A stretch of 64,000 nucleotides of DNA, from IMG/VR virus record IMGVR_UViG_3300027771_001853, positions 233,624-297,623 of that record; one strand, given 5' to 3'. The notes beneath the pieces are model-generated. The model made no database searches. It saw only the letters and a program-made list of their open reading frames with translations, and was not told the origin of the DNA. Shown here piece by piece: positions 6,581 to 45,786 of this stretch. Made by a program: the position numbers and the translations under genes. How positions within the stretch are numbered: position 1 is the stretch's first letter; each line of letters begins with the position of its first letter.

Positions 6581-7306
6581 TTATCTATCTAAAAAGTTGT
6601 TTAACTTCTTCATCATAGTTAAAGCATGTGTATTTGGACCATTAAAATCTGCTGGTATTGGTGGTGGTGTTGCCTCTTCTAAAGTCTCTTCATATTTGTC
6701 TTTGTCTTTTATGTCTTTGAATAGGTAAGCTCCTGGAGTTGATGGTGACGACACTAAATCAAAACATATCAATTCAAAATCATCTTGTACTATATTTTTT
6801 CCTCCTTCACTCTTTAGTGACCCTACACCCCTAGAAGAAATACCTAGAGTAACACCATGTCTTAATAGATTAGCTGCTATATCACCAACACATGAGATAA
6901 TACCCTTAGTGTGGTAAGCTGGTGAGGTTAGTATTTGTAGTTTCCCCATTAATGTGTCCCCGTCCCAAAAAGTCTCCACAACTCTATGGGAACTTCTTTC
7001 TAAGTCCACTAATGACGATTCTGGGTGATTTAATTCGGATAAGGCTCTACCTTGTCCTATTAGTTGTTGGTATTTGTCTACCTCTCTCTTTAATATGTCT
7101 GCTGGGTATATCCTACCATTTCTGTTTTGAACCCCACACTTCTGTAGGACAGCATAAATAAAAACACCTTCAGAATCTTTAAATCCTTTGGTTTCTGTTA
7201 TTATTTTTTTATTTAAATCGTAGTGTGGTGATATGTGTCCCGCATCAATTTCTAGTAGGACTCCTTTACCGATTTCGTTAGCTTCAAGTAATTTATATGT
7301 ACGCAT
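6581..7306 (-). CDS. gp21: prohead protease (gp21-like, peptidase S77)
   Basis: QNRNGRIYP, LSELNHP (His), GISSRGVGS (Ser), FDLVSSPSTPGA. Confidence 0.93.
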   Translation of the reverse strand: MRTYKLLEANEIGKGVLLEIDAGHISPHYDLNKKIITETKGFKDSEGVFIYAVLQKCGVQNRNGRIYPADILKREVDKYQQLIGQGRALSELNHPESSLVDLERSSHRVVETFWDGDTLMGKLQILTSPAYHTKGIISCVGDIAANLLRHGVTLGISSRGVGSLKSEGGKNIVQDDFELICFDLVSSPSTPGAYLFKDIKDKDKYEETLEEATPPPIPADFNGPNTHALTMMKKLNNFLDR

Positions 7307-7349
7307 AGATTAATATCTTTACATATAAATACAATAGAGATAATTAAAA

Positions 7350-8568: not shown

Positions 8569-8592
8569 AGATTTATATTTTACTATAAATAT

Positions 8593-20837: not shown

Positions 20838-20916
20838 AATTTTATTCTTTTTTATAAATTTATTAATTTTTATTCTTTTATTCAAGTAATTTATATTACT
20901 TTTACATTACCTTTAA

Positions 20917-23106: not shown

Positions 23107-26100
23107 ATTGTCATCACAACAACCCTTAACTTTTCTACAGAAACAACACCAATAATCCTAATTGTGTTATAGTTCATTATAGTAATGGTCACAGACGCGT
23201 CTCCAAGTAGTTTCATATCTCCACTAGCCCCATCGGTACTACCAATTAAGGAAATTAACACATCTCTACTATTAAGGTTGTGTGTCACATAAATCGAAGA
23301 ACCCACACCTAGGATGAAAGTGTTAAAATGGTCGGTAGTATATTTTCTAGCTAGTCCCATCTCGGTACTACCTGATGAAAGTGTACTACTTGGTGATGGG
23401 ATTTTTATTGAACCTGAACCTTGTGTATTTGCTGAGTAGACTGTTGACCCTGTTATCCACCCATTTGATATACTTATCCCTCTATCATCAGGGGTATTAA
23501 GCTCGACGTTACCAATAGTAGCTTTTAATACTAGTTTAGTACCTTTTACTTCTGATATTATCTCACTGTCACCAAATTTAGTTTTACCTTCTTCCGATTC
23601 TATTGTACTTTTACCACCTAGAGTGATATATGAACTTGCGTGTACACTTGTGGCTGAAACAGTATTACCGGTTAAGAATGTAGCCGTTATACCACCAATC
23701 ACATCTAGTTTACCATCTTCACCACCACCTTTCAGTCCAGAATTTAATGTTAATACACCATCTACAGTTGTATCACCACTAATGTTAGTTGTCCCACTAA
23801 ATGTTACCGGAACTCGTCCAAAACCTACAGAGTATGGCCAAATAACAACTATATTATCATCTGCTCTAAATAAGGGAGTACCAGGGTATGTGGTAGCGGT
23901 TATTGTTAAACCACCATTAATTGTAACATTTTTATTAAATTTACTATCCTCAGAGAATGAAGTCACACCAGAAACTCTTAATGCCCCATCTAAAATAGTG
24001 TTTCCTGTTACTTCAAATTGAGTGGGGGTACTAGCGTTTCTAAATCTAGCGATAAGTAGTTCACTTCCTTTTTCATCGCCATCAGGTGACCCTTGTATCC
24101 TTAAACTATCCTTGGTGGTACCATTATTATTTATTGTTAATCTACTACTAAAGTCTTGGTTAGACTCGTACCCACCAAAACCAGACGGTGTTCCAACCAT
24201 AACACTATCACCACTAATTGTTAATGTTTGATTTGTTGAACTACCTGTGAAGATACCAAATGGTGTATAACTACCATGACCAACGGCTATCCCAGAAGGT
24301 GATAGTTTTATCTGAGCTAGATTATACAATGGGTTTATGTTTTCAGATGTGGATTTTACCACTAAACCTGCTCCCACATTACTTCTACCTAAGAAATGAG
24401 CTACCACACTATTTTTACATGCCGCACTTAACGCTGGTTGTAAATCACTAGCTTCGATAGAAAGTGCTGCTGATGGGATGAAAGACAATCGTTGAGGGGT
24501 TACAGCTAAACCACTAGTTATTTGTGTTGTACTGGCTAGAATAATATTAGTACCATCTGGTCCTTCACCGGTTGCACCACAAGCGGTGATGTTTGCTGTG
24601 ACCAAACTACAAGCACTTAACACCCCTAAGACTTGGGTATTACCCGATATCAGACCACCGGAAGTGGTTGAGGACCTGGAGGAACTTGAGGTTTTAAAGT
24701 CTTGGAAATCCTTTACCTTAATAGCTCCGAACCCACCCGGTTTATTAGGGTCTAACTCTCTAACTAGAATTTGTGTTAACGTTGTTGAGGTCATTGCTGA
24801 CTGTACGTTTAATAAATTTGTGTATGACGTATCAGCACTATAAGCGAATATATCTTGTCCCGCAAGTATACTACTGTTGACCGCACTTGGTGCTATATGA
24901 TGGTTATACCCAGCTAATACCGCTGAGTTATTTCCAGTAATATGGTTGTTTCTACCTGCAAGTACGGATGACGAATTACCGTTAATAAGATTTTTTTGCC
25001 CTCCTAATATTGTAGAATATTGTGAAAGGGTACTAGCACTATTTAAAGAACCATTAAGTATTGTGTTGTATTGTTGTATGTTGGATATTGAATTGGCGGT
25101 AATAACTATTAGGTTTTGATTACCGTTAACTATTGTATTGTATGAGTTCTGGGTGGAAGTTCTGACTGGGTCAGCACCAGGTACCATCTGTACAGTATTT
25201 GTCCTACCAATAATGTTGTTGGTATTACCATTAATTATTGAATTACTTTTTGGTTGGTACGATGTTATTGTCTGATTTTGGCCATTGAGTATCTGGTTAT
25301 TTTGACTTTCTTTCAGACCACCCTTAGTATCGATAGTATTATAGTAACCATTTAGTATGGTCCCATATGATGTGGCTCCTGACTTTATGCGGTTATTTAC
25401 TCCAGTTCCTATAAGATTAGCCGTCCATCCACTTATCGCATTACCATATCCACCGGCAATTACATTACCTACACCACCCGCACGTCCACCGGAAGCCGTA
25501 CTAAAACCAAATTGTCCTGATATTTTATTCCAAGCTCCACTAATAATAGTTGATATGGAACCACTAAGAATGTGGTTACCGGTACCACCTACAACTGTAT
25601 TACCAATATAAACTGATGCATTTGAACCTCCAGCCCAGAATTTGTCTTTAGGTCTTATTAGGTTGGTACTCCCTATGGTACCCCCACTAAGCATATCACC
25701 ACCACCAAGAATTTGTGACCACTCAGAGGTTATAACGTTTTCATTAGGTCCTCCTGGTGATGTCGGGTTCCATGAATTTATCGGTCCTGCCCATTTATAT
25801 GGTGAAAGAAAGTTATTACATGTATCTGCTGTAACTGTTGTCCCCGAATTAGTATATAAATAAAGAGTACACCCTATTGTATGTGCAGAAACAACATAAC
25901 TATCTCCACTCATAAATTGTGGCTGTACTGAACCTGGTACTGGTGCCCATCTTGCTCTACCATCTGCATTTACACCAGCTAGGAATACGTTTGGACTTCC
26001 GGAATAGGCTGGACTATTAGGGATTATTATATTATTAGCTGCACCTCCATGATAATGGAATGGTCTGTCACCATCCCCAGTGTCTGTCCACACATTTAAT

Positions 26101-28529
26101 CCGTGTGTGTATGTTGTTTGGGAGGTTCTAGCTGTTATTGCGTTACCCCCTAATATTGCTGATGATGATGCTGTGTTAAATATAGTATTTCCAGTACCAC
26201 CTAGTATGTGACCACCATCAGCTAAAACTGTACTACCTGAACTACTTAATATAGTCGCAAATTTAGCACCACCAACATAATTACGAGTACCAGAAACATG
26301 ACTAAATGTAGTAGCCGAATTTAGATTATTATGATGACCGTGAATATTATTCCAACTAGAATTGTATACAAAATTTGTAATACCAAAAATTGTATTACCA
26401 GAACTACTTATTTCTAAATTACTTAACCCTTTTAAATGTGAATGTTCTCCCGCTCCTACACCACCAATAATGTTATTACTTTGACCTAACAGACTTGAAA
26501 AATTCCCAGAGGATAATCTCAGATTACCTTGTCCCATGAAAAAACCATGTTTACCCCCAAAAGTTATGTTGCCAACTCCGAACATAAGGTTGTACCCACC
26601 ATTAGTAGAGTTAAGTGCAGCATTGGATGAACCCCCTAGTATGTTGGTGTAGGTTTCAAAGTTATTATTCATACTCCCTCCTTGTACGTTACCATACAAA
26701 CCAGTAGTTTGGTTAAGTCCTAAAACTGGCATTATTGAATTGGTTCCAATCCCAAACTTATAAGGTCCTGCATTAGAACAAGTGTCAGCGGTTAAGGTTG
26801 TACCTGAATTAGTTACACCATACCAAGTACACCCACTTGTGTAGGCAGTTAACATATACACGTCAGAACCACTAAAACTAGTTATCCCACTTGGGATTAG
26901 ATTTGCTAAATTTTTCCACTTTGCGTGACCGTCATTATCATGAGAAACTAAAACTCTACCTAATCCTTGGTCTGCGTTTATACCGTGATATTGAAGCCAG
27001 TTACCGTTTGGTGTGTTTCCAGCTACATCAGAATTAACATTTAACCCTCTTAAATATGTTGTTTGAGCCGACATAGCGGTTAATTGTGAGGCCCCTATAA
27101 TCGCGGATGATATTGCTGTTTTTTCAATAGTATTTCCACTACCACCAACAATAACAACATCACTATTTTCATGTACCCTATTAAGAGTACCACCTACTAT
27201 GACTGAACTCTCACTACCATCCAAATCATTATTATTACCACCCACTATTGCACTATAGGTAGAAGCTGAAATTTCATTCTGAGTACCCCCTAGTATAGCA
27301 CTTCTAGTACTACCACTTATAACGTTAACTCCACCACCACCTATAAAACTTGCAGTACTGTATTTAAATTTATTAGCAGTACCTCCGACTATAACCGACT
27401 GTAGGCTCCCCGACATCACACTGTTAATACCACCGACTATAGCTCCGTATGCACTACCGTGTAAAAAATGGTTACTACCACCAACAATAGCACTGTAATA
27501 TGAAGGGACTCTAACAGTAGCTATTATCTTAGAACTAGTGGAACCAAGAATACTACTATATGATTCACCGGATATGGTATTTAATATACCACCAGCTATA
27601 ACATTATGTTGGTCATTTGAACCGGCTACTATTTTATTTTGTTTTCCAGCAAAAATACCTGATGAAGTGAACCCACCTTGTATAATATTACTATTACCAG
27701 CAGCGATTACATTGTCTTCTGAATTTATGCCCGACATAACTATATTATGTCTACCACCACCAATAACACTATATTTAGCGTTGGCTTGGTTTGCTCCTAG
27801 TTTTGGTTCTATAGATTGTAGTGCTTTTCCATAACGATATGGTCCAAAATCTTCACACGTATTAGCACTAAACGTTTGGTGTCCTGTATTAGAGGAATAA
27901 ACTAAGAATGTCGTACATCCTGTCGTATACCCACTTACTAAGAATGTTGCACCAGTTAAATTAACAGGTATAATATCATTCCCTCTTTTTACGCTATTAG
28001 TGGTACTATCCCAAATTAAATTGTAATCACCACCAACAGCAACATCCCTAACCATTAAATCACCAGCAATATCTAAAGTCGCTAATGGAGCTAACTTTCT
28101 AATACCTACAGTACCACCACTAGTTATTACTAATTGATGGTCTTGGGCAAAAGTAGTTCCAGTGGCGATAGTATATGTGTTGTAACTTCCCGTACCATTA
28201 CTAAAATCTACACCTGCTGCCCATATCGCGTTACCGACACCTATATCGCCTTTCCTATGTACTATGTAGGAATCTGTTTCATTTCTTGTTTGGAAGTTAA
28301 GTATAGCGTCACCCCCATCAGATACTATGGCTGCTTCTGAAGAGGCACCATCTCTAAATAATTCTAAATCCCAATCTGGTAAACTAGTACCCATACCAAT
28401 TTTCCCACCACTTCTAACGATAAAGTCAGCTATCCCAGTTCCTGAGTGTACAACACTAAATCCAGTGTATGAATCATTATCACCTTGACCCCAAACCCTT
28501 AAAGAGCCATATAAATCATTAATTCCCAT
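23103..28529 (-). CDS. giant fibre/adhesin-like protein (1808 aa) with Hep/Hag-like SxIxGGxxNxI repeats
   Basis: Dozens of about 14-15 aa repeats (e.g. SAILGGTQNEI, SVIVGGTLNRV), G(I/M)GT..P...L repeats near the N-terminus, C-terminal THNLNSRDVLISL domain. Confidence 0.8.
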   Translation of the reverse strand: MGINDLYGSLRVWGQGDNDSYTGFSVVHSGTGIADFIVRSGGKIGMGTSLPDWDLELFRDGASSEAAIVSDGGDAILNFQTRNETDSYIVHRKGDIGVGNAIWAAGVDFSNGTGSYNTYTIATGTTFAQDHQLVITSGGTVGIRKLAPLATLDIAGDLMVRDVAVGGDYNLIWDSTTNSVKRGNDIIPVNLTGATFLVSGYTTGCTTFLVYSSNTGHQTFSANTCEDFGPYRYGKALQSIEPKLGANQANAKYSVIGGGRHNIVMSGINSEDNVIAAGNSNIIQGGFTSSGIFAGKQNKIVAGSNDQHNVIAGGILNTISGESYSSILGSTSSKIIATVRVPSYYSAIVGGSNHFLHGSAYGAIVGGINSVMSGSLQSVIVGGTANKFKYSTASFIGGGGVNVISGSTRSAILGGTQNEISASTYSAIVGGNNNDLDGSESSVIVGGTLNRVHENSDVVIVGGSGNTIEKTAISSAIIGASQLTAMSAQTTYLRGLNVNSDVAGNTPNGNWLQYHGINADQGLGRVLVSHDNDGHAKWKNLANLIPSGITSFSGSDVYMLTAYTSGCTWYGVTNSGTTLTADTCSNAGPYKFGIGTNSIMPVLGLNQTTGLYGNVQGGSMNNNFETYTNILGGSSNAALNSTNGGYNLMFGVGNITFGGKHGFFMGQGNLRLSSGNFSSLLGQSNNIIGGVGAGEHSHLKGLSNLEISSSGNTIFGITNFVYNSSWNNIHGHHNNLNSATTFSHVSGTRNYVGGAKFATILSSSGSTVLADGGHILGGTGNTIFNTASSSAILGGNAITARTSQTTYTHGLNVWTDTGDGDRPFHYHGGAANNIIIPNSPAYSGSPNVFLAGVNADGRARWAPVPGSVQPQFMSGDSYVVSAHTIGCTLYLYTNSGTTVTADTCNNFLSPYKWAGPINSWNPTSPGGPNENVITSEWSQILGGGDMLSGGTIGSTNLIRPKDKFWAGGSNASVYIGNTVVGGTGNHILSGSISTIISGAWNKISGQFGFSTASGGRAGGVGNVIAGGYGNAISGWTANLIGTGVNNRIKSGATSYGTILNGYYNTIDTKGGLKESQNNQILNGQNQTITSYQPKSNSIINGNTNNIIGRTNTVQMVPGADPVRTSTQNSYNTIVNGNQNLIVITANSISNIQQYNTILNGSLNSASTLSQYSTILGGQKNLINGNSSSVLAGRNNHITGNNSAVLAGYNHHIAPSAVNSSILAGQDIFAYSADTSYTNLLNVQSAMTSTTLTQILVRELDPNKPGGFGAIKVKDFQDFKTSSSSRSSTTSGGLISGNTQVLGVLSACSLVTANITACGATGEGPDGTNIILASTTQITSGLAVTPQRLSFIPSAALSIEASDLQPALSAACKNSVVAHFLGRSNVGAGLVVKSTSENINPLYNLAQIKLSPSGIAVGHGSYTPFGIFTGSSTNQTLTISGDSVMVGTPSGFGGYESNQDFSSRLTINNNGTTKDSLRIQGSPDGDEKGSELLIARFRNASTPTQFEVTGNTILDGALRVSGVTSFSEDSKFNKNVTINGGLTITATTYPGTPLFRADDNIVVIWPYSVGFGRVPVTFSGTTNISGDTTVDGVLTLNSGLKGGGEDGKLDVIGGITATFLTGNTVSATSVHASSYITLGGKSTIESEEGKTKFGDSEIISEVKGTKLVLKATIGNVELNTPDDRGISISNGWITGSTVYSANTQGSGSIKIPSPSSTLSSGSTEMGLARKYTTDHFNTFILGVGSSIYVTHNLNSRDVLISLIGSTDGASGDMKLLGDASVTITIMNYNTIRIIGVVSVEKLRVVVMTI

Positions 28530-28530
28530 A

Positions 28531-31500
28531 TTATCCTATTATTACAGTTTTTATATTATCTTTATTCATAGTAAGCTCTACAGTTATAGTATTTAATGTT
28601 ACATATACAATCGTTGCATCGATTCTCTGACCTGCTTCTTTCCAAAGATTCACTACCACATCTAGTGTATCTAAATTATGTGTTATTGTTTCAGCTACAT
28701 TCGCTGTATAATTTCTTGTGTCCACAAATTTCTGTGGTACATTCCACGCGTATAATGTAGTTGCTGATATTGTTCCAGCTGTTAAACCACACATATATGT
28801 GGTATTAGGTTGTGTAGCTGTTAAATTGTTACACCCTATAATCGCTGACGATACAGCAGTATATTCAATCGTGTTTCCAGTACCACCAACAATATGACCA
28901 AAGTTGCCATCTACTGTATTACCGGAACCACCTAATATTGTCCCATACCCACCGGAAGGTCCAATACTATTACTTCTACCATTAAGGATTGTAGCGTAGT
29001 CTCGCATGATAGAATTATTAGTACCATTACCAATCATACTAAAATATCCTCCGTTCAAATGGCCGATTGTATTACCGGAACCACCTAAAATAACATCATA
29101 CCCTAGACCGGTTGCCCGATTACCAAGTCCACCCAATATGGATTTATGTCCAGAATTAACCACATTTCCCCAAGCTCCTGATGTATAGTCGTCAGTTATA
29201 ACATTACTATCACCACCAACAATACTACTATTAGAGATTCTTCTTATATCGTTTTGTTTACCTGCACCAATAAAATTATAGTGACCACCACCAACTATTA
29301 GATTACTCATTCCACCTACTATAGCACTAACCTTTGTTCTTCCTGTGTAATCTGTTTTTTGTGTTATAAAATTAAGTTCACCACCACCTATAAATGAACT
29401 GGTACTACCTGTAATGGTATTTCTATACCCACCAACTACTACTGAGGTGTCTGCTGATTGGATGATATTGTTATATCCGGCACCTATAAACACACCGGAC
29501 GTAGAATTGTTACTTCTAGAACCAGAGTAAGGACTATTAATTAAATTATGTTGTCCAGCAACAATTACTGAACTATTAGATTCACCACTTATTGAGTTAT
29601 TTCTTCCACCTAAAATAGCAACTGTATTTGCTGATATAATCTGGTGGTGGTGCCCATTTAAAATCGTACTGTAACTTGACCCTGATGTTATCCTATGTAG
29701 TGAACCGTTACCAATTAAATTATAACCACCCTCTTTACCTGGTCTTAATTGTGCTTTATTACCAGTTATTCTATTTTGTTTACCGTTTATAATTGTACTC
29801 CATTGTGCACCATCTTCTAAATAATTGGCGTCACCATTTAAAATAGTACCACCACGAACTGAAGCGTTATACCCACTATAACCATTTAAAATGGTTCTAT
29901 GGTTGTAAGGTTTCATAGAATCAGTATAGGTATTCCAGAAGGTGGTGTTTACAATTTTATTTTCTTGTCCATTACCTATGAAGTCATGTATTCCTTCGAT
30001 ATCATTACTGATACCATTAACAACTGAACCAAACGTACCCGGAGCTCTATTAAATAACCCCCCTTGTACTGTAGAGAAATTCCCCACTGTGGTATTTGTA
30101 CCTAAAACTGGTTTTATTGAGTTTGTGCCCGCTCCATATTGGTAAGGTCCTAGATTAGAACATGTATTTGCGGTTAATACCGCTCCTTGACATAAGGTTC
30201 CACCTGTTAGTGTCATATAAACCGTACACCCACTTGTGTAAGCGGAGGCCATATAACACCCACCAGACACGTTAGTTATGCCACTAGGTATAAATGGTAA
30301 ACTTATCCATTTTGCGTGACCATCATCAGTATTAGACATTAAGAATTTACCATTCCCTGGTGAAGCATAATTACCATGGTACCTAAATGGTCTGTGTTCT
30401 GTATTAGATACCCCACCTAGTGCTTGGGTTATGTCAGTATGAGCATCCAAACCTCTTGTATATGTTGTTTCGGAAGAATAAGCGATTAATCCCACACCGG
30501 CTGAGATGGTTGACGCACTAGCTGTAGATGATATTGTGTTTGCACTCGAGTTTAATATAACACCGTACACAGCATTAACCTTATTAAGTTTACCCGCCAA
30601 AATACTACCGTGTTCTCTAAATACTTTATTTTTAGTACCACCAACAATTGAAGCTGTTGATGCACTTATTTCATTCTGGTAACCACCTAATATAGAAGAG
30701 TAACCCCTACCCCCTTCTTTTACCAAAAAGCCATCTGTTAGACCACTTGTAATAACGTTTTTATAACCACCACCTACAAACCCCCAACCAATATCTCTTA
30801 TTACGTTCGATTGACCACCCGCTATAGTTGATTTAGTAGCTCCACTTATTAAATTTGTTTGTCCACCAGCAATCGTATTCCCAAACCTATCATTAACAGT
30901 AGGGTTACCACTCGACCCAACGTAAGGGTTTAATATTTTATTAGATACCCCACCTAGTATGGCAGATGTAGACGCTGAAGATATTAAGTTATCTTTTCCA
31001 TTTACGATAACACTATTACTACTAGCTACATTGAGTCCTACCCCAAGAATACCACTACCAGCTATAGTATTACCAGAACCACCACCTATAGAAGCGTTTG
31101 TATTATCTGGGCTAATTACATTAAGGTACCCACCAGCGATATTAGAATACTGACCTCTGGCGATATTCTCCCCTAAACGTGGTCTAATTCCGGTGTAGTC
31201 CGGTGCAGTCTCATTAAAGACGTAAGGTGTCTCACCCGATAATTGTAAATTCCATTGTACACCGTCACTTCTATGAATATTAATAATACTTGGATGTCCA
31301 CCTAGGTTGGTACCCCATGATGTGTCGTCCACATATAAATCAGTAAATACTGTAGCTGAAGACGATACTGTACCCCACATTAGTTGGTTACTACATCCAC
31401 CTGTTTGTGATGCTGGTGGAGCTAAAACTAAAGTTTGTCCAGTGGTTGCTGGACCATACATTGGGAATGTATACCCTGAAGTGGCTTTTTCAAATTTTAT

Positions 31501-31866
31501 ACCACAGTCCCCACATGGTGTTATTGTACCCGCAGTTAAAGCTGAATCACAAAATTCAGGAAACACACTAAGAGTTAGAGTACCATCACCAAATGAATCA
31601 GTAATTGTAATACCAGAACCACCAATTAAACTATAAAAATTTAATGTACCGTTATCTGCAGCATAAGTTTTGCTATGGTAAACCCCGAAAGTACCTGCAG
31701 GACCAACATTAAGACCAATGGTGTCGTTAATCTTTTGATTTAACATCAAAAGACTCGTATCTAATTCGGCCCAACTTAGGACAGAACCTTTTGGTATTGC
31801 TTGTCCAGCTATGGGGGACGCATTTGAACGAGTAAAAAATTGACTCGGATATGGGGTTAAAGGCAT
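28531..31866 (-). CDS. fibre/adhesin-like protein (1111 aa), paralog of 23103..28529
   Basis: Same repeats and hinge (IPSGIT..SG...AYTSGCT...TANTCSN.GPY..G.GTNSI.PVLG); N-terminal KGSVLSWAELD; C-terminal THNLDTLDVVVNL. Confidence 0.8.
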   Translation of the reverse strand: MPLTPYPSQFFTRSNASPIAGQAIPKGSVLSWAELDTSLLMLNQKINDTIGLNVGPAGTFGVYHSKTYAADNGTLNFYSLIGGSGITITDSFGDGTLTLSVFPEFCDSALTAGTITPCGDCGIKFEKATSGYTFPMYGPATTGQTLVLAPPASQTGGCSNQLMWGTVSSSATVFTDLYVDDTSWGTNLGGHPSIINIHRSDGVQWNLQLSGETPYVFNETAPDYTGIRPRLGENIARGQYSNIAGGYLNVISPDNTNASIGGGSGNTIAGSGILGVGLNVASSNSVIVNGKDNLISSASTSAILGGVSNKILNPYVGSSGNPTVNDRFGNTIAGGQTNLISGATKSTIAGGQSNVIRDIGWGFVGGGYKNVITSGLTDGFLVKEGGRGYSSILGGYQNEISASTASIVGGTKNKVFREHGSILAGKLNKVNAVYGVILNSSANTISSTASASTISAGVGLIAYSSETTYTRGLDAHTDITQALGGVSNTEHRPFRYHGNYASPGNGKFLMSNTDDGHAKWISLPFIPSGITNVSGGCYMASAYTSGCTVYMTLTGGTLCQGAVLTANTCSNLGPYQYGAGTNSIKPVLGTNTTVGNFSTVQGGLFNRAPGTFGSVVNGISNDIEGIHDFIGNGQENKIVNTTFWNTYTDSMKPYNHRTILNGYSGYNASVRGGTILNGDANYLEDGAQWSTIINGKQNRITGNKAQLRPGKEGGYNLIGNGSLHRITSGSSYSTILNGHHHQIISANTVAILGGRNNSISGESNSSVIVAGQHNLINSPYSGSRSNNSTSGVFIGAGYNNIIQSADTSVVVGGYRNTITGSTSSFIGGGELNFITQKTDYTGRTKVSAIVGGMSNLIVGGGHYNFIGAGKQNDIRRISNSSIVGGDSNVITDDYTSGAWGNVVNSGHKSILGGLGNRATGLGYDVILGGSGNTIGHLNGGYFSMIGNGTNNSIMRDYATILNGRSNSIGPSGGYGTILGGSGNTVDGNFGHIVGGTGNTIEYTAVSSAIIGCNNLTATQPNTTYMCGLTAGTISATTLYAWNVPQKFVDTRNYTANVAETITHNLDTLDVVVNLWKEAGQRIDATIVYVTLNTITVELTMNKDNIKTVIIG

Positions 31867-31899: not shown

Positions 31900-32793
31900 T
31901 TAGAATAAATTAAAGTGGTTTGTGGGTTTTGATTTGTATTTGTATTTGTTTTCCCCTAGTATGTTGGTTACTTTTTTACCTAGAGTAAGAGCGTTAAATA
32001 CGTCCTCTACCACCACATACTCATTTTTGGTATGGTAATTGTAGTATCCAGCCGCAAAATTTAAACAACTAAAATCAAATTTCTTTTTTAACATCATAGT
32101 ATCGGTGTATGGGTGATTTAACCATTCTGTTATACCATGTTCTAAAATTACGTCTTTAGTTTTATTAATAAACTCACTATTTTCTTCAAATAATTTTACA
32201 CCCATTAATGAAATACTCATAGTATCGTTTTCTGTAGAATCAAATTGTAAGGCATAACCAACGTCTTTAAAAAAGTCTTCGTCAGCTTCTTTAGAACCGT
32301 GACACCCAGTTTCTTCAGCAACAGGTAGGAATATTTTACAAACATCCAATTCTTTTAATAGTTCCAAACATATAAAAACACCAGCTTTATCGTCACCACC
32401 TATACCAGTGGGTTCACCACTTATTTTTTCATAAGCTTTTAAAGCTAATTTTAATTCACCCTGTGCGTTAGGTAACATTTCTTCTTCTACTACCATATCT
32501 ACCTTTTCATGTACACTATCTAAATGAGCAACAAAACATGGGTAATATTCAGCTTTACCTTTGGTTATGTAGATGTTACCTAAACTGTCTATGTCCATAT
32601 CATCGAAACCTTTAGTGTTGGTTACTATGTATTCGATTAACTCGTCTTCTTCCCAAGTTTTAGTTGGGACAGATAAAATATTTTTTAACCTTGCCAGTTT
32701 TTCTTTGTGTTCATTAGAGTGATATTCGTCGTCAATATAATCATTTACCATATTAGTTTGATTTTTAAGGATGTGTTCTGTTGTTTTACTCAT
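31900..32793 (-). CDS. zinc peptidase, M28/M42-like
   Basis: VAHLDSVH, GIGGDDKAG, AEETGCHGS, FAAGYYNYHT; TATCTTTG promoter at 32809-32816 (minus). Confidence 0.85.
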   Translation of the reverse strand: MSKTTEHILKNQTNMVNDYIDDEYHSNEHKEKLARLKNILSVPTKTWEEDELIEYIVTNTKGFDDMDIDSLGNIYITKGKAEYYPCFVAHLDSVHEKVDMVVEEEMLPNAQGELKLALKAYEKISGEPTGIGGDDKAGVFICLELLKELDVCKIFLPVAEETGCHGSKEADEDFFKDVGYALQFDSTENDTMSISLMGVKLFEENSEFINKTKDVILEHGITEWLNHPYTDTMMLKKKFDFSCLNFAAGYYNYHTKNEYVVVEDVFNALTLGKKVTNILGENKYKYKSKPTNHFNLF

Positions 32794-32902: not shown

Positions 32903-33312
32903 GGGGGTGACTGGAATTGATTGGCATTATTTGGTTAATATCAGCACGTCAAGCCTGAATTAAGCTTGTAAAACTGATTCACACTTTCTAAACGGTGACG
33001 TATTAGATACTATGGCTACTCTTGGACTTGTCCGTGAAGAGTCATTAGCGACAGCGTAGTTAGACTACGAGGTTGTTACATCCCATCTAAAGAATTTAAG
33101 ATTTGTGTCTTTAGTTTTTGGGGTGTCGAATAGACAAATCGAACCCGGGAATATTACCCCACCGGTTTATGTTGGGCGGGTAGTTGAGACTGACTTGAAG
33201 GTTGTTTATTCTATAGGGTTAAGTCTGACAACAAATGAATGAACTAAACGTGTAGGATAGATATTTTTTGAAGATGAACAAGACGGGGGTTCGATACCCC
33301 CCACCTCCACCA
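32903..33312 (+). ncRNA. ssrA: transfer-messenger RNA
   Basis: 5' GGGGGTGACTGGAATTGA; 3' GACGGGGGTTCGATACCCCCCACCTCCACCA; acceptor GGGGGTG/CACCTCC with G3:U70 and A73, encoded CCA; internal tag ORF. Confidence 0.95.
32994..33059 (+). other. tmRNA tag reading frame (A)GDVLDTMATLGLVREESLATA-stop
   Basis: Open frame after CTAAAC ending in hydrophobic SLATA then TAG; resume codon inferred from Gly-start tags of Bacteroidota tmRNAs. Confidence 0.7.
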
Positions 33313-33614: not shown

Positions 33615-34403
33615 TTAGGCTGTTGTGGATGCTTGTTTACCAAATAGATTACTAATAAACCCAGTAAGTCCAGTACCAGCATCTTTCATATTAAAGCCTT
33701 CTGATTCTTTTCCTGGTGTTTCTCCAGCACCTGAAACTTTTTGTGTTGTAGCGTCACCCATTCTTCCTTTTAAGTCTTTTAAATTATCACATAAAACTGG
33801 GATAGCTTTTTTCTTAATATCTTCAAGGAAAGCGTCATCAATTAATTCATTCATACTTTCACCAACCCAACTACTAAACATTCCACCACCAGGTAAAGTA
33901 CCGGTCATTTTCCTGAAATAGTATTCAAGGACACCTTTTAACACTTTATCTAATAAAAATTCACAACTACTAAATAATTTAGGGAATTGTGTAAATGGGA
34001 CATTACCTAAAGAAATCGCGATAGCGTCTCTTAGACCACTTTCTTTTACACCGAACACACTTAAAACCCATGTAATTAAATACGTACGAATCCCTTCTAC
34101 AGCACCTGTTGATGAAGCACCGAATATAAGACTCATAATACCCTCATTAATTATTTTTGGGTTAACACCTTTTTCACCTAAACGTATACTTTTACTAGCA
34201 ACAACACTAAAGATATCACTAGAATTAGATTCATTTATGACTTTATACTTTTTGGATATCTTTTGGAATGTTTTATTAACTAAAACTTTGTGTTCCCTTA
34301 GTAGTTGTTTTTCATTGATTGTAGTTTTTTTATTTCTACTTTCTCTGATAACTTTTCTAACTACGTTTTTTAGGTTTTTTTCGTTTAATTTTATAACTGT
34401 CAT
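33615..34403 (-). CDS. KLxE-leader protein with hydrophobic helical cargo
   Basis: MTVIKLNEKNLKNVVRKVIRES leader; repeated INE sites. Confidence 0.7.
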   Translation of the reverse strand: MTVIKLNEKNLKNVVRKVIRESRNKKTTINEKQLLREHKVLVNKTFQKISKKYKVINESNSSDIFSVVASKSIRLGEKGVNPKIINEGIMSLIFGASSTGAVEGIRTYLITWVLSVFGVKESGLRDAIAISLGNVPFTQFPKLFSSCEFLLDKVLKGVLEYYFRKMTGTLPGGGMFSSWVGESMNELIDDAFLEDIKKKAIPVLCDNLKDLKGRMGDATTQKVSGAGETPGKESEGFNMKDAGTGLTGFISNLFGKQASTTA

Positions 34404-34405
34404 AT

Positions 34406-36724
34406 CTAAAATTTCTCTGTTTTTTTAATGTTTCTACGTGTTTTTAAATCATAAGCTTTTCTTACTTTTCTAGAACCATCACCTAAAGCTGGGAAATTAT
34501 GATTATCGTAACATGTTTTAAGTGGTCTTAAATTAGTTGCCTTTTTCATACCACTTTTTAACATACCAGCTTCAAACCTAATTAAAATCTGACAATACTT
34601 TTTTTGTTGTTTACCAGAAGAATTCATAACATCTTTTTGTAACTTACCTCTTTTACCTGGTACACTTTCACTTTGTGTTTCTTCTTTTTCAGGTTTTACT
34701 GGACTAGGTTTTACTGTTGTTGTGTCTGTGGTAACTGTTTCTTCTTCAGGTTTTACTGTTTCACCAGCAGTCTCATTCTTATATTTTAAAGTTTCCAAAG
34801 CTATTAAATCATCACAATCTATAACCCCTCTTTGTGATTGGTCACTCTTACCTAAAAAGGCATTAACAGCTGTTTTAGTTTCTGCACCGAAGTCACCGTC
34901 TGCTCCATGTTCAGGTAATTTATAACCATTTCTTATCAATTCTTTCTGTAGTTGTTTAACACCACTTCCACTATCACCTAATTTAAACACATTAGTACAT
35001 TCTTTTACTGAGTCATATGATTTTGTTTCTTTTTTCTTTTTTGGTTTGTTTTCTTCACCAGCAGTGTTGTCAACTTTTCCTCTAACTCTACGGATTCTAT
35101 GTTTTCCCTCAATCTCACTTCTACTATATTTTTGTTCACCTAGAAAATGGTTTTCTTTTATTAACCTTTCCAAACCTTTATAAGCTTCTTGTAATACCTC
35201 AAAATCAGCCGCATCCATCACATATGCGATTGCTGCACCTTGTAATACATGATTTTGTCTTTTTGCTGTTCTAGGGTTATCTTGTACCATCTCATCATAA
35301 ATGACATCAGCATAACCACCAGGACCAGCAATAGTACCTAAATCTTCACCTTTTTCATAAAGTTCTCCGGCTACCTCAATATCCCTACCTAATTCGTAAT
35401 CACCACCAGTAGAGTCACCCTTTCCAAATATTTTTAATATAGCTGCTCTATCATCTGCGTCCGCTATTGCTCCTACTTTTTTATTAGGTAACAATAAATA
35501 AACTTTATCTTCAGAATTTTCTATATATTCAAACTGTCCTAAATATTCTTTTCCTGCGGCTACAAATACTGGAGCTACATTACCATCAACAAACACATCA
35601 ACAGTATCACCATCAAATAATAGTTTAAATTTAACTCTTGTGGCTGGTAAACCTTCTGGTCTATTAACCATATCATTCGCTAAATTTTCTATTTTATCGT
35701 TTAAGTCCTCTGGACTATATATTTTTTCACCATCAATAATACAAATAGGTTTATCTCTTAATATATCAGCAATCGGTTGGAAGTCACCCTCATCCAATTC
35801 ATCTAATAATTCTTCTAACAAAGGTGTCCCAAATTTTAATTGGTAGATACCTGATAAGTGTGAACAATCGTAAAGTGAATTTATTTGTCTAAAAGCTGAG
35901 TAGATATCATCTTCTTCTGTACCAGCACCTTTTGTAGCTCCAAAAGACAACACATCAACAACCCCTTTACCAAAATATTTTTCACCACCTTCAGTAGCAT
36001 CATTAATTACATCAGCTAATTGGGATAATGCTCCTTCATCTTGAAAATTAAAAGGTATTTCCTGTATTAGACCTTGTTGTTCTACTTGGTCGTAAACTTC
36101 CGGTGTAAAAGCGATAGATAAGTAATCGTCTTCACTTAACTCACCACCACCAGACCAATCCTCCATAGCTGAGGCTGCGTTTCCTGGTACTTTCGCACCA
36201 CTACTACCTATATTACCTATAAGATACGCTCCCGTACCCCAAGTTAATAACCTGTTTAATCCAGAAGCGGCTTGTTTATTAATAATTGCTTTACTTACAT
36301 TAAGTGGTACAAGTCCTTTGCCTAATTTTTGACCAGTAGCTATTTTTGACGCGATAGACGCTGGTACACCCTTTAACCCAGTTGTACTTACTCTACCAAA
36401 CCCACCTATCCATTTTAAACCATTAGGTAAACTTTTCATTATACCACGACTACCTATCGATGCTCCACCTCTACCTATATTAGCTAAACCTCTAACAGCT
36501 GTAGGAAGAATTCTTGCTAGTCCAGCAATTAATGGTGCCCACTCAGTTAAAAGAGCGTACGGTTTTTCACTATTATTTTTTTTAGTATTTTTTGGTGTTA
36601 ACTTATCTAAGTTATTATATTCTAATAAGTCTTTTTGTTCTGTATGTGGTTGTGCTCTGTCGAACCCAATTAAATACTGTAAAGAGCCTAATTCCTCTTT
36701 AAGATTTTGTTTGTCTTTTTGCAT
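34406..36724 (-). CDS. multidomain protein: Gly-rich amphipathic segment, annexin-like repeat, peptidoglycan-binding domain
   Basis: ATKGAGTEEDDIYSAF...YQLKFGTPLLEELLDELDEGDF; FKLGDSGSGVKQLQKELIRNGY...GADGDFGAETKTAV (PG_binding_1 pattern); start reassigned to MQKDKQ. Confidence 0.75.
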   Translation of the reverse strand: MQKDKQNLKEELGSLQYLIGFDRAQPHTEQKDLLEYNNLDKLTPKNTKKNNSEKPYALLTEWAPLIAGLARILPTAVRGLANIGRGGASIGSRGIMKSLPNGLKWIGGFGRVSTTGLKGVPASIASKIATGQKLGKGLVPLNVSKAIINKQAASGLNRLLTWGTGAYLIGNIGSSGAKVPGNAASAMEDWSGGGELSEDDYLSIAFTPEVYDQVEQQGLIQEIPFNFQDEGALSQLADVINDATEGGEKYFGKGVVDVLSFGATKGAGTEEDDIYSAFRQINSLYDCSHLSGIYQLKFGTPLLEELLDELDEGDFQPIADILRDKPICIIDGEKIYSPEDLNDKIENLANDMVNRPEGLPATRVKFKLLFDGDTVDVFVDGNVAPVFVAAGKEYLGQFEYIENSEDKVYLLLPNKKVGAIADADDRAAILKIFGKGDSTGGDYELGRDIEVAGELYEKGEDLGTIAGPGGYADVIYDEMVQDNPRTAKRQNHVLQGAAIAYVMDAADFEVLQEAYKGLERLIKENHFLGEQKYSRSEIEGKHRIRRVRGKVDNTAGEENKPKKKKETKSYDSVKECTNVFKLGDSGSGVKQLQKELIRNGYKLPEHGADGDFGAETKTAVNAFLGKSDQSQRGVIDCDDLIALETLKYKNETAGETVKPEEETVTTDTTTVKPSPVKPEKEETQSESVPGKRGKLQKDVMNSSGKQQKKYCQILIRFEAGMLKSGMKKATNLRPLKTCYDNHNFPALGDGSRKVRKAYDLKTRRNIKKTEKF

Positions 36725-36770
36725 AATAATTATTTTTCTCCTATAAATATGTTTATAACGGTAAAAAAAG

Positions 36771-37364
36771 TTACATATAAGTAGGATTCCCCTTACCTCT
36801 TGTAACTTTACTTTCCCATGGTGCTCCACTTTGTAGTGGATTAGCGTTTGCTCGTGTTAAACCAGTGTCGTGTGGTCCTCCACTTTGTAGTGGGTTCCCT
36901 TTCCCTCTTGTGACCCCTGTTTCCCATTCTGGTGCTCCTGTCCCACCCCCACCACTTGGTGTTGAGGTGTCACTACTCGTTGTATCTAGTCCTCCGTCTA
37001 GGTCTTGTTCAGATAAATCATCTTCATTACTACCCAACCATTCATCCAATAAATCTCCAGCTATTCCATTAACTCTGCCATTTATTTGAATTAGTGTTGG
37101 TTCTTCCTCTTCTATGGTTATTTCCTCCATAGCTTGACTTATAAGGTCTTCCCTAAACTCTTCAATAACTGTATTAATGTTAATTTCTTCACCTAACTTA
37201 GTTTCTAAATCTAGAAAATTGAAAACATCTACACTTATGTCGTCCCCAACAATAGGTGCTTCATCTTCGTATTCAGTACCATCGTATTCGGTATCGTATT
37301 CTTTTAATACTTTCCTTACTAAATTTTCTATGTCGGATTCTGTTAGTTTTACCACCTTTCTCAT
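36771..37364 (-). CDS. KLTE-leader protein with three C-terminal W(E)xxVTRGxxNP repeats
   Basis: MRKVVKLTESDIENLVRKVLKE; WETGVTRGKGNPLQSG / HDTGLTRANANPLQSG / WESKVTRGKGNP. Confidence 0.75.
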   Translation of the reverse strand: MRKVVKLTESDIENLVRKVLKEYDTEYDGTEYEDEAPIVGDDISVDVFNFLDLETKLGEEININTVIEEFREDLISQAMEEITIEEEEPTLIQINGRVNGIAGDLLDEWLGSNEDDLSEQDLDGGLDTTSSDTSTPSGGGGTGAPEWETGVTRGKGNPLQSGGPHDTGLTRANANPLQSGAPWESKVTRGKGNPTYM

Positions 37365-37379
37365 TGTTCTATGTTTATC

Positions 37380-37459
37380 TATAAATACTTTGTAACATAT
37401 TATAAATATTTTCGTATACCCTATTAGTTAATTAAAAAAAACATTATCTTTGTATTATG
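37380..37459. repeat. copy A of an 80-bp bidirectional promoter cassette
   Basis: First 37 nt identical and 68/80 identical without gaps to 47191..47270. Confidence 0.92.
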
Positions 37460-45006: not shown

Positions 45007-45369
45007 ATGAAAACGATTATCTGTGATATAGACGGTACTTTAGTTTCATACAAAAAAGACACTAAGGGTATTGTTACAACACCTCACGACATATTACCGG
45101 GGGTTTCAAAACACCTTAATAAGTGGGAAAATCAAGGTTGTAAAATAATTCTTATTACCGGTAGGAGGGAAAACTTAAGAAAAGTAACTGAGGAAGAATT
45201 AACTAATCTAGGTCTTCCTTTTGATTTACTAATCATGGGTTGTGCTGATTCTGGTAGGGTATTAATAAATGATGAAGGTGGTAAAGTAAAAGCTCACGCG
45301 GTATCTTTAAAACGTGATGAAGGATTTAATGACTATGATTGGTCTGAAGTTGGTTTAAGTAAGGTATGA
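45007..45369 (+). CDS. HAD-superfamily phosphatase (PseT phosphatase-like)
   Basis: IICDIDGTL (DxDGT), ILITGRRE, RVLINDE. Confidence 0.85.
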   Translation: MKTIICDIDGTLVSYKKDTKGIVTTPHDILPGVSKHLNKWENQGCKIILITGRRENLRKVTEEELTNLGLPFDLLIMGCADSGRVLINDEGGKVKAHAVSLKRDEGFNDYDWSEVGLSKV

Positions 45370-45635
45370 AAAAAGAAACAGTGAGAAATATAGAGTTGTT
45401 GGTAAAGGATATCGTGGGTGTTGTGACATTCAAAGAAATCAAAACCCGCATAAATGACGGTAGAATATCGTCACATTTAGAATTACGGTTATGGGGGTTA
45501 TCGAGTATATACACCGACCCAACCTACCTAAAGATTATTTACGAGGCCTTTAAAATTAAAAAATATACTTGGTTAAAGTACCTTAACCCCAGATATTGGG
45601 TACTGTTGTTGGGTTGTTTCTTTGTATTGGTCTAG
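45366..45635 (+). CDS. hypothetical protein
   Basis: 89 aa, start overlaps HAD stop. Confidence 0.55.
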   Translation: MKKETVRNIELLVKDIVGVVTFKEIKTRINDGRISSHLELRLWGLSSIYTDPTYLKIIYEAFKIKKYTWLKYLNPRYWVLLLGCFFVLV

Positions 45636-45786
45636 CTGGTTCTACTAAGATGTTAGTCCCTCTTGTCGTATCTTCTTTAACACTACCCATTCTAGATTTT
45701 AATAAATCTAAATCTTGGGGGGACAATCCTCCTTGTTTTGAGTCTATAAAACCTTTTAACCAATTGTAAAAATCTCTGTGATTCAT
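45583..45786 (-). CDS. hypothetical protein
   Basis: 67 aa MNHRDFYNWLKGFID; follows 45793..46095. Confidence 0.6.
   Translation of the reverse strand: MNHRDFYNWLKGFIDSKQGGLSPQDLDLLKSRMGSVKEDTTRGTNILVEPARPIQRNNPTTVPNIWG

What the first reader, a model, noticed from the sequence alone, without database searches (positions are those of the whole stretch)
34406..36724. Annexin-like repeat fused to a peptidoglycan-binding domain in a leader-bearing protein
Seen: ATKGAGTEEDDIYSAFRQI...YQLKFGTPLLEELLDELDEGDFQPIADIL (about 35758-35938) aligns by eye with the annexin repeat AMKGLGTDExxLIEIL...YxxxYGKxLxxDIxSETSGDFxxLLxxL; a Gly-rich amphipathic stretch (WAPLIAGLARILPTAVRGLANIGRGG) precedes it and a PG_binding_1 domain (about 34858-34988) follows. 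Established: the GxGT(D/E)E loop is the annexin Ca2+/phospholipid site. Inference: an ejected protein that bridges membrane and cell wall during DNA entry, or patches the membrane after injection.
Basis: partly seen in the sequence, partly recalled or inferred. Interest (0 to 1): 0.7.

Follow-up and report, generated by a model that had tools for sequence, protein, structure and literature searches.

The report
Phage annexin repeat fused to wall-binding domain
An uncultured marine jumbo phage encodes a 772-residue protein that joins one genuine annexin-type (calcium/lipid-binding) repeat to a peptidoglycan-binding domain, a combination not described for viruses; it probably ties the cell wall to a membrane, but how it reaches the cell envelope is unproven.

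Summary
Window 34406-36724 (-) is one 772-aa gene in a 297.6-kb T4-like jumbo phage record. Residues 230-325 form an annexin repeat. A profile of its orthologues finds only annexins in the PDB (E 2e-4), and E reaches 9e-18 when paralog-family segments are added. Two AlphaFold models give annexins or giardins as top hits in Foldseek and in an independent VIA search (Z up to 10.2, unrelated hits 5.5 or lower). The GxGT loop and the distal acidic cap (D308/E309) are conserved. P0001 itself misses Pfam PF00191, but one related protein passes the threshold. PG_binding_1 (residues 578-645) is above Pfam's cut-off. A basic, glycine-rich region (56-185) is present, with no confident transmembrane helix and no signal peptide.

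The "ejected bridging protein" idea is plausible but untested. In its favour:
- an oriented TATTTATA element 25 nt upstream, shared with the prohead protease, gp25-like and gp19-like genes
- conserved synteny between leader-bearing genes
- a T4-type prohead protease in the genome and a conserved L-x-E at residues 8-10

Against it:
- the target's N-terminus does not match the flanking genes' leader profile
- no virion data exist
- no lytic domain was found

A shorter paralog lies elsewhere in the genome. I found no cultured-phage relative beyond the wall-binding domain.

The parts
34406..36724 (-). Whole gene, 772 aa plus stop (P0001)
   Evidence: ORF list and translation. 20 homologues align from this ATG.
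36742..36749 (-). Promoter-like element TATTTATA (sense strand), 25 nt from its first base to the ATG
   Evidence: 43 of 79 genome occurrences lie within 80 nt upstream of ORFs in sense orientation, median distance 23 nt. The same element precedes the prohead protease, gp25-like and gp19-like genes.
36635..36724 (-). Conserved N-terminal motif, residues 1-30 (family consensus M-x-K-x-K-x-x-L-x-E-E-L ... L-x-G-Y), with a candidate L-x-E protease site at residues 8-10
   Evidence: L8, E10 and E11 are at least 90% conserved. The motif is shared only with paralog P0022. It does not match the flanking genes' leader HMM.
36170..36559 (-). Basic glycine-rich, weakly hydrophobic region, residues 56-185
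   Evidence: pI 11.8, 18% Gly, 15 K+R against 1 D+E. The best 19-residue Kyte-Doolittle window scores 1.29, so there is no confident TM helix. pLDDT is below 50.
35750..36037 (-). Annexin-type repeat, residues 230-325: helix A 230-245, inserted loop 246-261, helices B-E 271-323
   Evidence: Profile hits to annexins only. Foldseek top 50 are all annexins. VIA-wide Z 9.3-10.2 to giardins and annexin I domain 1. AFDB cluster top hits are named Annexin.
35942..35989 (-). Family-specific insertion between helix A and the GxGT loop, residues 246-261 (core E-G-G-E-K-Y-x-G-K); the most conserved stretch of the protein
   Evidence: Absent from the paralog family. Mean top-residue frequency 0.82. Low pLDDT in both models.
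35912..35932 (-). K-G-A-G-T-E-E loop, residues 265-271: annexin AB-loop (type II Ca2+ site) signature
   Evidence: G268, T269 and E271 are invariant; G266 and A267 are 95% conserved. The loop aligns to annexin K-G-x-G-T-D-E.
35798..35803 (-). D308-E309, candidate acidic cap of the Ca2+ site; 39 residues lie between T269 and E309 (38 in the canonical site)
   Evidence: E309 is invariant and D308 95% conserved. E309 aligns with the Glu of annexin A4 K-S-E-L-S.
35420..35749 (-). Beta-rich domain, residues 326-435, fold not identified
   Evidence: Seven strands plus a helix, pLDDT 61-81 (10-residue block means). Only weak PH-domain-like Foldseek hits. No VIA, Pfam or Atlas hit.
35081..35419 (-). 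Alpha/beta domain, residues 436-548, fold not identified, highly conserved
   Evidence: No hit in any library.
34790..34993 (-). PG_binding_1 domain, residues 578-645
   Evidence: Pfam 29.7 bits against cut-off 23. Family profile against PDB PG-binding domains of phiKZ gp144, SleB and others, E 3e-10. VIA Z 6.1, 34% identity to the AP3 endolysin domain.
34445..34654 (-). C-terminal four-helix domain, residues 691-760, with two conserved Cys (C711, C738); shared with the paralog
   Evidence: pLDDT 73-84 (10-residue block means). 41% identity to the P0022 C-terminus. No fold match above background.
34409..34444 (-). Basic C-terminal tail, residues 761-772
   Evidence: Alignment A1 shows K/R-rich tails in all family members.
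36771..37364 (-). Upstream neighbour, 197 aa, carrying the K-L-T-E-S-D-I leader; two TATTTATA elements upstream
   Evidence: Position conserved in relatives.
33615..34403 (-). Downstream neighbour, 262 aa, carrying the same leader type; its ATG lies 2 nt after the target's stop; weakly hydrophobic segment at residues 101-119
6581..7306 (-). T4 gp21-type prohead protease (Peptidase_S77), the enzyme that would process any capsid-targeted protein
   Evidence: Pfam E 1.4e-25, 90.3 bits.

Best explanation
The gene encodes a late-expressed envelope-acting protein of a marine T4-like jumbo phage. Shown: it contains one annexin-type repeat with an intact GxGT/acidic-cap signature and a PG_binding_1 domain. 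These are preceded by a very basic glycine-rich region and followed by a conserved Cys-containing helical domain with a basic tail. Inferred mechanism: both recognisable domains make sense only outside the cytoplasm. Peptidoglycan is there, and so is millimolar Ca2+ in seawater-bathed periplasm, whereas bacterial cytosolic free Ca2+ is sub-micromolar (general knowledge). The protein would therefore hold peptidoglycan through residues 578-645. The annexin repeat, helped by the basic region, would dock Ca2+-dependently on anionic phospholipid of the inner membrane or the inner leaflet of the outer membrane. The result is a wall-to-membrane tether. Most likely route (least certain step): it is packaged in the head through its N-terminal segment, trimmed by the S77 prohead protease after a conserved L-x-E, and expelled through the tail at infection together with its leader-bearing neighbours. 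There it would stabilise or seal the entry site.
For: - Annexin repeat: profile searches, Pfam hits in relatives (P0067 31.8 bits, above the cut-off of 25; orthologue P0016 E 2e-4), fold searches and conserved Ca2+-site residues.
- PG_binding_1.
- No signal peptide and no confident TM helix, so ordinary export is not obvious.
- Late/structural co-regulation: an oriented TATTTATA element lies 25 nt before the ATG, the same distance as for the prohead protease. It also precedes the gp25-like and gp19-like genes.
- The gene order leader-gene / target / leader-gene / peptidase is conserved in relatives at only 35-41% identity.
- A T4-type prohead protease is present, and L8-x-E10 is at least 90% conserved.
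- [LI][LT]E[SAET] is 5.4-fold enriched in the first 20 residues of the phage's proteins. The hits include the capsid protein, the scaffold-position gene, the protease and a portal-adjacent gene (the pattern was chosen post hoc).
- Precedent: T4 capsid targeting sequences of 10-20 residues, cleaved after Glu, load diverse proteins that are delivered into the host (PMC9026906, PMC5694885).
Against: - No virion proteomics or expression data exist, and I found no cultured relative.
- The target's N-terminus is not a statistically recognisable member of the neighbours' leader family.
- T4 internal proteins go to the cytoplasm, not the periplasm.
- No muralytic domain was found, unlike known envelope-crossing ejection proteins.
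- Late expression fits lysis or exclusion functions equally well.
- P0001 itself does not reach Pfam's annexin threshold.
- A single repeat may bind lipid weakly or not at all.
- Lipid, Ca2+ and wall binding are all untested.
Confidence: 0.4

Rival explanations
1. The domains and the tethering chemistry are the same, but the protein is made late in infection and inserted into the inner membrane by its weakly hydrophobic segment (signal-anchor or SAR-like). It would then act from the infected cell: superinfection exclusion, control of lysis timing, or reinforcement of the envelope during a long jumbo-phage cycle.
For: Paralog-family members have a better hydrophobic segment at the same position (Kyte-Doolittle 1.84 in P0067, 1.55 in P0063). 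The late-type upstream element is equally compatible. The gene lies far from the tail module. The N-terminus does not match the neighbours' leader.
Against: In P0001 and its orthologues the segment contains two Arg and scores only 1.29-1.52. In P0022 the positive charges lie after the hydrophobic segment, not before it, which argues against an N-in/C-out anchor (sequence). The gene sits tightly between two leader-bearing genes in conserved order.
Confidence: 0.3
2. It is a tail- or baseplate-associated structural protein, such as a tail-tip or tape-measure accessory, that uses the wall-binding domain to grip peptidoglycan during penetration. It would not be packaged in the head.
For: Wall-binding or wall-degrading domains are common in tail-tip proteins (general knowledge). 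Glycine-rich hydrophobic stretches occur in tape-measure proteins. The upstream element is shared with tail genes.
Against: The gene lies about 60 kb from the tail/baseplate block (genome coordinates about 99-210 kb, against 268 kb for the target). No long-helix tape-measure architecture is predicted. It has no similarity to any PHROG structural family outside the wall-binding domain.
Confidence: 0.12
3. The annexin fold is real but has been re-used for something other than lipid binding, for example protein-protein contacts or Ca2+ sensing. The invariant inserted loop (residues 246-261) would be the true functional site.
For: The insertion is the most conserved segment of the protein (0.82) and interrupts the helix A/B junction next to the Ca2+ loop. 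There is a single repeat rather than a four-repeat disc. Some paralog-family members have degenerate GxGT motifs (P0050, P0058).
Against: The GxGT loop and acidic cap are invariant across orthologues that are only 35% identical overall, which argues for a retained Ca2+ site.
Confidence: 0.12
4. The annexin resemblance is a chance or convergent motif match in a generic helical bundle.
For: Single-sequence E is 0.13. There is no Pfam hit for P0001 itself. Per-repeat HMMER scores are individually weak. Foldseek E-values are 0.07-0.5.
Against: Every top hit in four independent searches is an annexin or giardin. Isolated annexin I domain 1 aligns over all 73 of its residues at 2.0 A. The full-length model, built without the paralogs, gives the same result. 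Relatives reach or approach Pfam's threshold.
Confidence: 0.03

Closest known systems
Bacterial single- and few-repeat annexins (Cytophaga hutchinsonii, Kordia, Aquimarina and others; Kodavali et al. 2014, PMC3894181)
   Same: They have annexin repeats outside eukaryotes, often a single repeat fused to unrelated domains or TM segments, and occur mostly in marine Bacteroidetes. That is the likely host phylum here: the nearest capsid hits are Flavobacterium phages, and many ORFs carry Bacteroidetes-style signal peptides (inference). The nearest AFDB fold clusters are short proteins named Annexin.
   Different: That survey found no annexins in viruses and reported no peptidoglycan-binding partner domain. 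This protein is phage-encoded and carries a 16-residue invariant insertion before the GxGT loop. It reaches Pfam's threshold only through relatives.
Eukaryotic annexins (A4, A5, A6, XII; giardins)
   Same: The five-helix repeat fold, the K-G-x-G-T-(D/E)-E AB loop and a distal acidic residue are shared.
   Different: There is one repeat instead of a four- or eight-repeat disc. Identity is 15-20%. The protein is embedded in a 772-aa multidomain chain. Lipid binding is untested.
Phage proteins with PG_binding_1 (phiKZ gp144 endolysin, Burkholderia AP3 endolysin, Bacillus SleB-like lysins)
   Same: The three-helix wall-binding module is shared.
   Different: No catalytic (muramidase, amidase, peptidase or transglycosylase) domain was detected anywhere in the protein.
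T4 internal proteins and giant-phage ejection proteins (IPI-III, Alt; phiKZ/SPN3US inner-body proteins)
   Same: The phage has a T4-type capsid protein, portal, terminase and S77 prohead protease. It has a short conserved N-terminal segment with L-x-E, and neighbours that share only a leader, as T-even internal-protein loci do (PMC9026906, PMC5694885).
   Different: Packaging and cleavage are unproven. The domains point to the periplasm, not the cytoplasm. The target's N-terminal motif differs from its neighbours' leader.
Envelope-spanning ejection proteins of podoviruses (T7 gp14/15/16, P22 gp7/20/16)
   Same: Both are sets of adjacent genes for weakly hydrophobic proteins thought to act in the envelope at DNA entry, and T7 gp16 has a wall-directed domain (general knowledge; P22 channel preprint 10.64898/2026.09.03.749273, abstract only).
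   Different: There is no sequence or fold similarity. This protein has a binding domain rather than a lytic one. The virion is a myovirus-type.

Membership tests
Annexin (Pfam PF00191) | The sequence matches the family profile above the curated threshold (25 bits) | tested here: not met
   P0001, whole or as residues 222-335, gives no hit at E up to 10. Orthologue P0016 scores 21.7 bits, paralog P0022 16.5 bits, and paralog-family member P0067 31.8 bits, which passes.
Annexin (Pfam PF00191) | A reverse profile search from the phage family recovers annexins specifically | tested here: met
   The orthologue-only profile A2 gives 17 top hits that are all annexins/giardin, E 2e-4. Profile A3 gives 60 listed hits, all annexins, best E 9e-18.
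Annexin (Pfam PF00191) | Five-helix annexin repeat fold | tested here: met
   These are predicted models, not experimental structures. Foldseek probability is about 1.0 with all top 50 hits annexins. VIA-wide gives Z 9.3 (sub-model) and 10.2 (full model), with unrelated hits at 5.5 or lower.
Annexin (Pfam PF00191) | Type II Ca2+ site signature: G-x-G-T in the AB loop plus an acidic residue about 38 residues downstream | tested here: met
   G266-A-G268-T269 with E309 39 residues after T269. G268, T269 and E309 are invariant; G266, A267 and D308 are 95% conserved. This is sequence evidence only.
Annexin (Pfam PF00191) | A core of four (or eight) repeats forming a curved disc | tested here: not met
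   Only one repeat is detectable per protein, as in the bacterial single-domain annexins (PMC3894181).
Annexin (Pfam PF00191) | Ca2+-dependent binding to acidic phospholipid | not testable with these tools
   The Ca2+ co-folding job was not folded. Liposome assays are needed.
PG_binding_1 (Pfam PF01471) | Profile match above the curated threshold (23 bits) | tested here: met
   29.7 bits, E 7.3e-7, covering model positions 1-37 of 57. The family profile hits PDB wall-binding domains at E 3e-10.
PG_binding_1 (Pfam PF01471) | Three-helix bundle fold | tested here: met
   Residues 578-645 align to the AP3 endolysin domain (Z 6.1, 34% identity) and to the C. difficile PG-binding protein (Z 5.7). 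Local pLDDT is only 54-66.
PG_binding_1 (Pfam PF01471) | Binds peptidoglycan | not testable with these tools
   A sacculus pull-down is needed.
T4-type capsid-targeted internal/ejection protein | The phage encodes a gp21-type (S77) prohead protease | tested here: met
   Window 6581-7306, Pfam E 1.4e-25.
T4-type capsid-targeted internal/ejection protein | A short N-terminal propeptide ending in a hydrophobic-x-Glu cleavage motif | tested here: inconclusive
   L8-K9-E10 is at least 90% conserved and such motifs are enriched at N-termini. However, the motif is short, and the target does not match the neighbours' leader HMM.
T4-type capsid-targeted internal/ejection protein | Present in the virion, processed, and delivered to the host | not testable with these tools
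   There is no cultured relative and no proteome.
Virion-associated peptidoglycan hydrolase / endolysin | A catalytic wall-degrading domain | tested here: not met
   PHROG endolysin hits cover only the binding domain. No catalytic domain was found in Pfam, NCBIfam, the PDB profile search or fold searches.

The most novel reading that the evidence does not exclude
This is the first viral annexin. A jumbo-phage head-packaged protein is shot into the periplasm of a marine bacterium. There it uses seawater-level Ca2+ to clamp its annexin repeat onto membrane phospholipid while its PG_binding_1 domain holds the wall. This seals or anchors the DNA-entry site, a bacterial-scale analogue of annexin membrane repair. 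The finding would also suggest that annexin repeats move between Bacteroidota and their phages.
Probability: 0.25. Interest if true: 0.75.

Novelty: new variant of a known kind. Interest (0 to 1): 0.55.

Why it matters
Annexins are regarded as eukaryotic membrane-repair and trafficking proteins with a few bacterial outliers. A 2014 survey found none in viruses (PMC3894181), and my literature searches found no later report. A conserved phage family that fuses one annexin repeat to a wall-binding domain gives a small, tractable system for asking two questions: what a single annexin repeat can do, and how Ca2+-dependent lipid binding works on bacterial membranes. It also adds a non-enzymatic wall/membrane tether to the known ways large phages deal with the Gram-negative envelope. 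If the protein is ejected, it bears on the open question of what jumbo-phage ejection proteins do on arrival.

Tried and rejected
- Direct Pfam scan of P0001 for annexin found no hit.
- tblastn of the target, both neighbours, the paralog and the best annexin segment against 50,697 cultured or deposited phage records returned only wall-binding-domain matches or nothing. Megablast of the locus found nothing.
It worked with A1.
- The Protein Atlas search of the central domains gave no usable hit.
- Foldseek on the full 772-aa model was dominated by spurious DH/PH and FERM hits at rmsd 17-24 A, so I did not use them.
- The co-folding job with Ca2+ was not folded and gives no evidence either way.
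- I considered whether the target shares its neighbours' K-L-T-E-S-E-L leader. The HMM test rejects this.
- I tested the classic T4 late promoter TATAAATA in sense orientation. The enriched, positioned element is its reverse complement, TATTTATA.
- I considered endolysin and virion-hydrolase readings and rejected them for lack of any catalytic domain.
Full report
**What is there.** Window 34406-36724 (-) encodes a 772-aa protein, P0001. The mechanical ORF extends to a GTG at 36829. However, all 20 database homologues begin at the ATG at 36724, and a promoter-like element lies between the two starts.

The window is the right-hand 64 kb of a 297.6-kb IMG/VR virus record, estimated 93% complete. 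It encodes:
- a T4-type major capsid protein, portal and large terminase
- a gp21-type prohead protease, Peptidase_S77, E 1.4e-25
- elsewhere in the genome, gp25-like, gp19-like and sheath proteins

The nearest capsid relatives are Flavobacterium phages at 36% identity. GC content is about 33%. This is an uncultured marine T4-like jumbo phage. Its host is probably a member of the Bacteroidota; that is an inference from the capsid hits and from the many Bacteroidetes-style signal peptides among the ORFs.

**Checking the annexin claim.** Evidence strengthens step by step:
- Pfam does not hit P0001 with PF00191, even at E 10.
- phmmer of residues 230-420 against all PDB sequences puts annexin A4 first, but only at E 0.13.
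- A profile of the 21 orthologues over residues 222-335 (A2) returns 17 annexins/giardin as its top hits at E 2e-4.
- A shorter paralog, P0022 (549 aa, genome 19026-20675), and its family carry the same segment without a 29-column insertion.
- Adding six such segments (A3) gives 60 listed PDB hits, all annexins, the best being annexin VI at E 9e-18.
- One paralog-family member, P0067, passes Pfam's annexin threshold outright (31.8 bits against 25). Orthologue P0016 reaches 21.7 bits, and P0058 hits Annexin_2.

One caveat applies to the profile results. The whole-sequence E-values sum several weak per-repeat matches (i-E 0.4-60). What carries the argument is specificity: nothing but annexins appears.

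**Fold.** The full-length AlphaFold model, built from orthologues only, has a mean pLDDT of 55.7. It places helices at 230-245, 271-279, 284-298, 302-309 and 312-323. A model of residues 222-335 reaches pLDDT 83.7 and pTM 0.74.
- Foldseek against the PDB returns annexins for all top 50 hits, probability about 1.0 and TM about 0.55, though E is only 0.07-0.5 for this short domain.
- VIA-align against 48,161 chains, independent of Foldseek, gives alpha-11 giardin Z 9.3 and annexin I domain 1 Z 8.9 (73 of 73 residues, 2.0 A). The astrotactin annexin-like domain scores 7.8, and unrelated folds 5.5 or lower.
- The full-length model gives the same list, Z 10.2-7.4 on residues 226-340.
- The AlphaFold DB cluster search is led by short proteins named Annexin.
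- In the viral structure library only one protein matches: an 801-aa uncharacterised protein of an uncultured phage.

**Ca2+ site.** K265-G-A-G-T-E-E271 aligns with the annexin K-G-x-G-T-D-E loop. G268, T269 and E271 are invariant, and G266 and A267 are 95% conserved. E309 (invariant) and D308 (95%) align with the acidic cap, 39 residues after T269 against the canonical 38. An insertion at residues 246-261 (core E-G-G-E-K-Y-x-G-K) sits just before the loop. It is the most conserved stretch of the protein and I cannot explain it.

**Other parts.**
- PG_binding_1 is above threshold. The family profile matches the binding domains of phiKZ gp144, SleB and others at E 3e-10, and the fold matches the AP3 endolysin domain.
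- No catalytic domain exists in the protein.
- Residues 56-185 are very basic and glycine-rich, with no confident TM helix (maximum Kyte-Doolittle score 1.29). The N-terminus is hydrophilic, so there is no classical signal peptide.
- Two central domains, 326-435 and 436-548, are highly conserved but match nothing.
- The C-terminal helical domain has two conserved Cys and a basic tail, and is shared with the paralog.

**Context and route.** In relatives only 35-41% identical, the gene order is conserved: small leader-bearing gene, 314-375-aa leader-bearing gene, target, roughly 280-aa leader-bearing gene, M20/M42-like peptidase, a large protein, ClpB-like ATPase, Hsp70.

The neighbours' leader (K-L-T-E-S-E-L-x-x-I-E) occurs on at least 9 ORFs of this genome and is conserved in their orthologues. 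The target's N-terminus (M-x-K-x-K-x-x-L-x-E-E-L ... G-Y) does not match that HMM (E > 2). It is shared significantly only with the paralog. "Leader-bearing" is therefore only loosely true.

An oriented element, TATTTATA, is strongly positioned before start codons. Of its 79 genome occurrences, 43 lie within 80 nt upstream in sense orientation, with a median of 23 nt to the ATG, compared with 19 for its reverse complement. It precedes the prohead protease, a portal-adjacent gene, the gp25-like and gp19-like genes, the target (25 nt), its upstream neighbour (two copies) and the paralog. This suggests late, structural-type expression, but no transcript data exist.

[LI][LT]E[SAET] is 5.4-fold enriched in the first 20 residues (p 1.5e-6; the pattern was chosen after looking). 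The hits include the head-assembly proteins. This fits T4-type processing after Glu and the capsid-targeting-sequence precedent (PMC9026906, PMC5694885).

**Interpretation.** Domain identities are well supported. An extracytoplasmic site of action is inferred from three features: the wall-binding domain, a Ca2+-requiring lipid-binding fold, and a conserved Cys pair. A wall-to-membrane tether is the simplest reading.

Delivery by ejection from the head is my favoured route, at about 0.4, on the circumstantial grounds above. Export during infection is a serious rival at about 0.3. A tail-associated role, or a re-purposed annexin fold, cannot be excluded. Chance resemblance is very unlikely.

**Comparison with known families and novelty.** The closest known relatives in kind are the bacterial single- and few-repeat annexins, which occur mostly in marine Bacteroidetes. 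That survey found none in viruses and no wall-binding partner domain (PMC3894181). My literature searches found no phage annexin, within the limits of the library.

The family is small and confined to this lineage of marine jumbo phages. I rate it a new variant of known kinds: a new architecture and a new host class for a known fold, with moderate interest.

Noticed in passing
window 32903-33312 (+): A phage-encoded tmRNA: Rfam RF00023, 89.6 bits (gathering score 47), E 2.9e-35, full-length model match. ARAGORN reported no tmRNA or tRNA in the window. It lies between the peptidase gene and the target's downstream neighbour. The spurious 'GGIEPP'-type ORFs at the same place in relatives suggest it is conserved.
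   Followed up: partly
window 36771-37364, 33615-34403 and others; genome ORFs 45228-45650, 50717-51115, 279416-279718, 280396-280809, 293431-293889, 293908-294189: A family of otherwise unrelated proteins share only an N-terminal leader of about 20 residues (M-x-K-x-x-K-L-T-E-S-E-L-x-x-L-I-x-K-V). It is conserved in orthologues at 30% overall identity. This resembles the polymorphic internal-protein loci of T-even phages with a common capsid targeting sequence.
   Followed up: partly
genome-wide; in the window e.g. 7324-7331, 8584-8591, 36742-36749, 37380-37387, 37401-37408 (+ strand coordinates): An oriented upstream element, TATTTATA (sense), lies about 23 nt before start codons of at least 39 ORFs, including head, tail and baseplate genes. 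It is a candidate late promoter and is the reverse complement of the T4 late -10 box.
   Followed up: partly
G000:C1:19026-20675 (+) = L002:487-2133: Paralog P0022 (549 aa) has the same plan: N-terminal motif, hydrophobic segment, annexin repeat without the insertion, PG_binding_1 (E 7e-10) and the same C-terminal Cys domain (41% identity). It has its own small family in the same phage lineage.
   Followed up: yes
window 18497-20374 (-), 20376-20885 (-), 21058-23106 (+): The phage encodes a chaperone set next to this module: full-length Hsp70/DnaK (Pfam E 1.8e-258), Hsp20, and a two-AAA ClpB-like ATPase. All are conserved in relatives.
   Followed up: no
window 31900-32793 (-): An M20/M42-type metallopeptidase (phrog_4191 E 5e-35; weak DapE/PepT-like NCBIfam hits) sits in conserved synteny two genes downstream of the target, at 64-68% identity in distant relatives. 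Its function is unknown.
   Followed up: no
window 36774-36929 (-), C-terminus of the upstream neighbour: A short motif, roughly W-E-x-x-V-T-R-G-K-G-N-P-L-Q-S-G, recurs three times in a Gly/Pro-rich tail (sequence).
   Followed up: no
window 23103-28529 (-) and 28531-31866 (-): Two large proteins (1808 and 1111 aa) have no Pfam or PHROG hit. Only the N-terminal ~85 residues of the 1111-aa protein (M-P-L-x-P ...) are conserved in the 500-889-aa proteins at the same position in relatives.
   Followed up: no
BFVD entry A0A6J5RF64 (not in the window): This is the only viral predicted structure that matches the annexin sub-model: an 801-aa uncharacterised protein of an uncultured Caudovirales phage (probability 1.0, TM 0.63, rmsd 2.7 A, 21% identity). 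It may be a distant member of the same family outside the marine lineage.
   Followed up: no
genome 187576-201114 (-), 4258-15066 (-), 109552-117771 (-): There are very large ORFs of 4512, 3602 and 2739 aa in the tail-side half of the genome.
   Followed up: no
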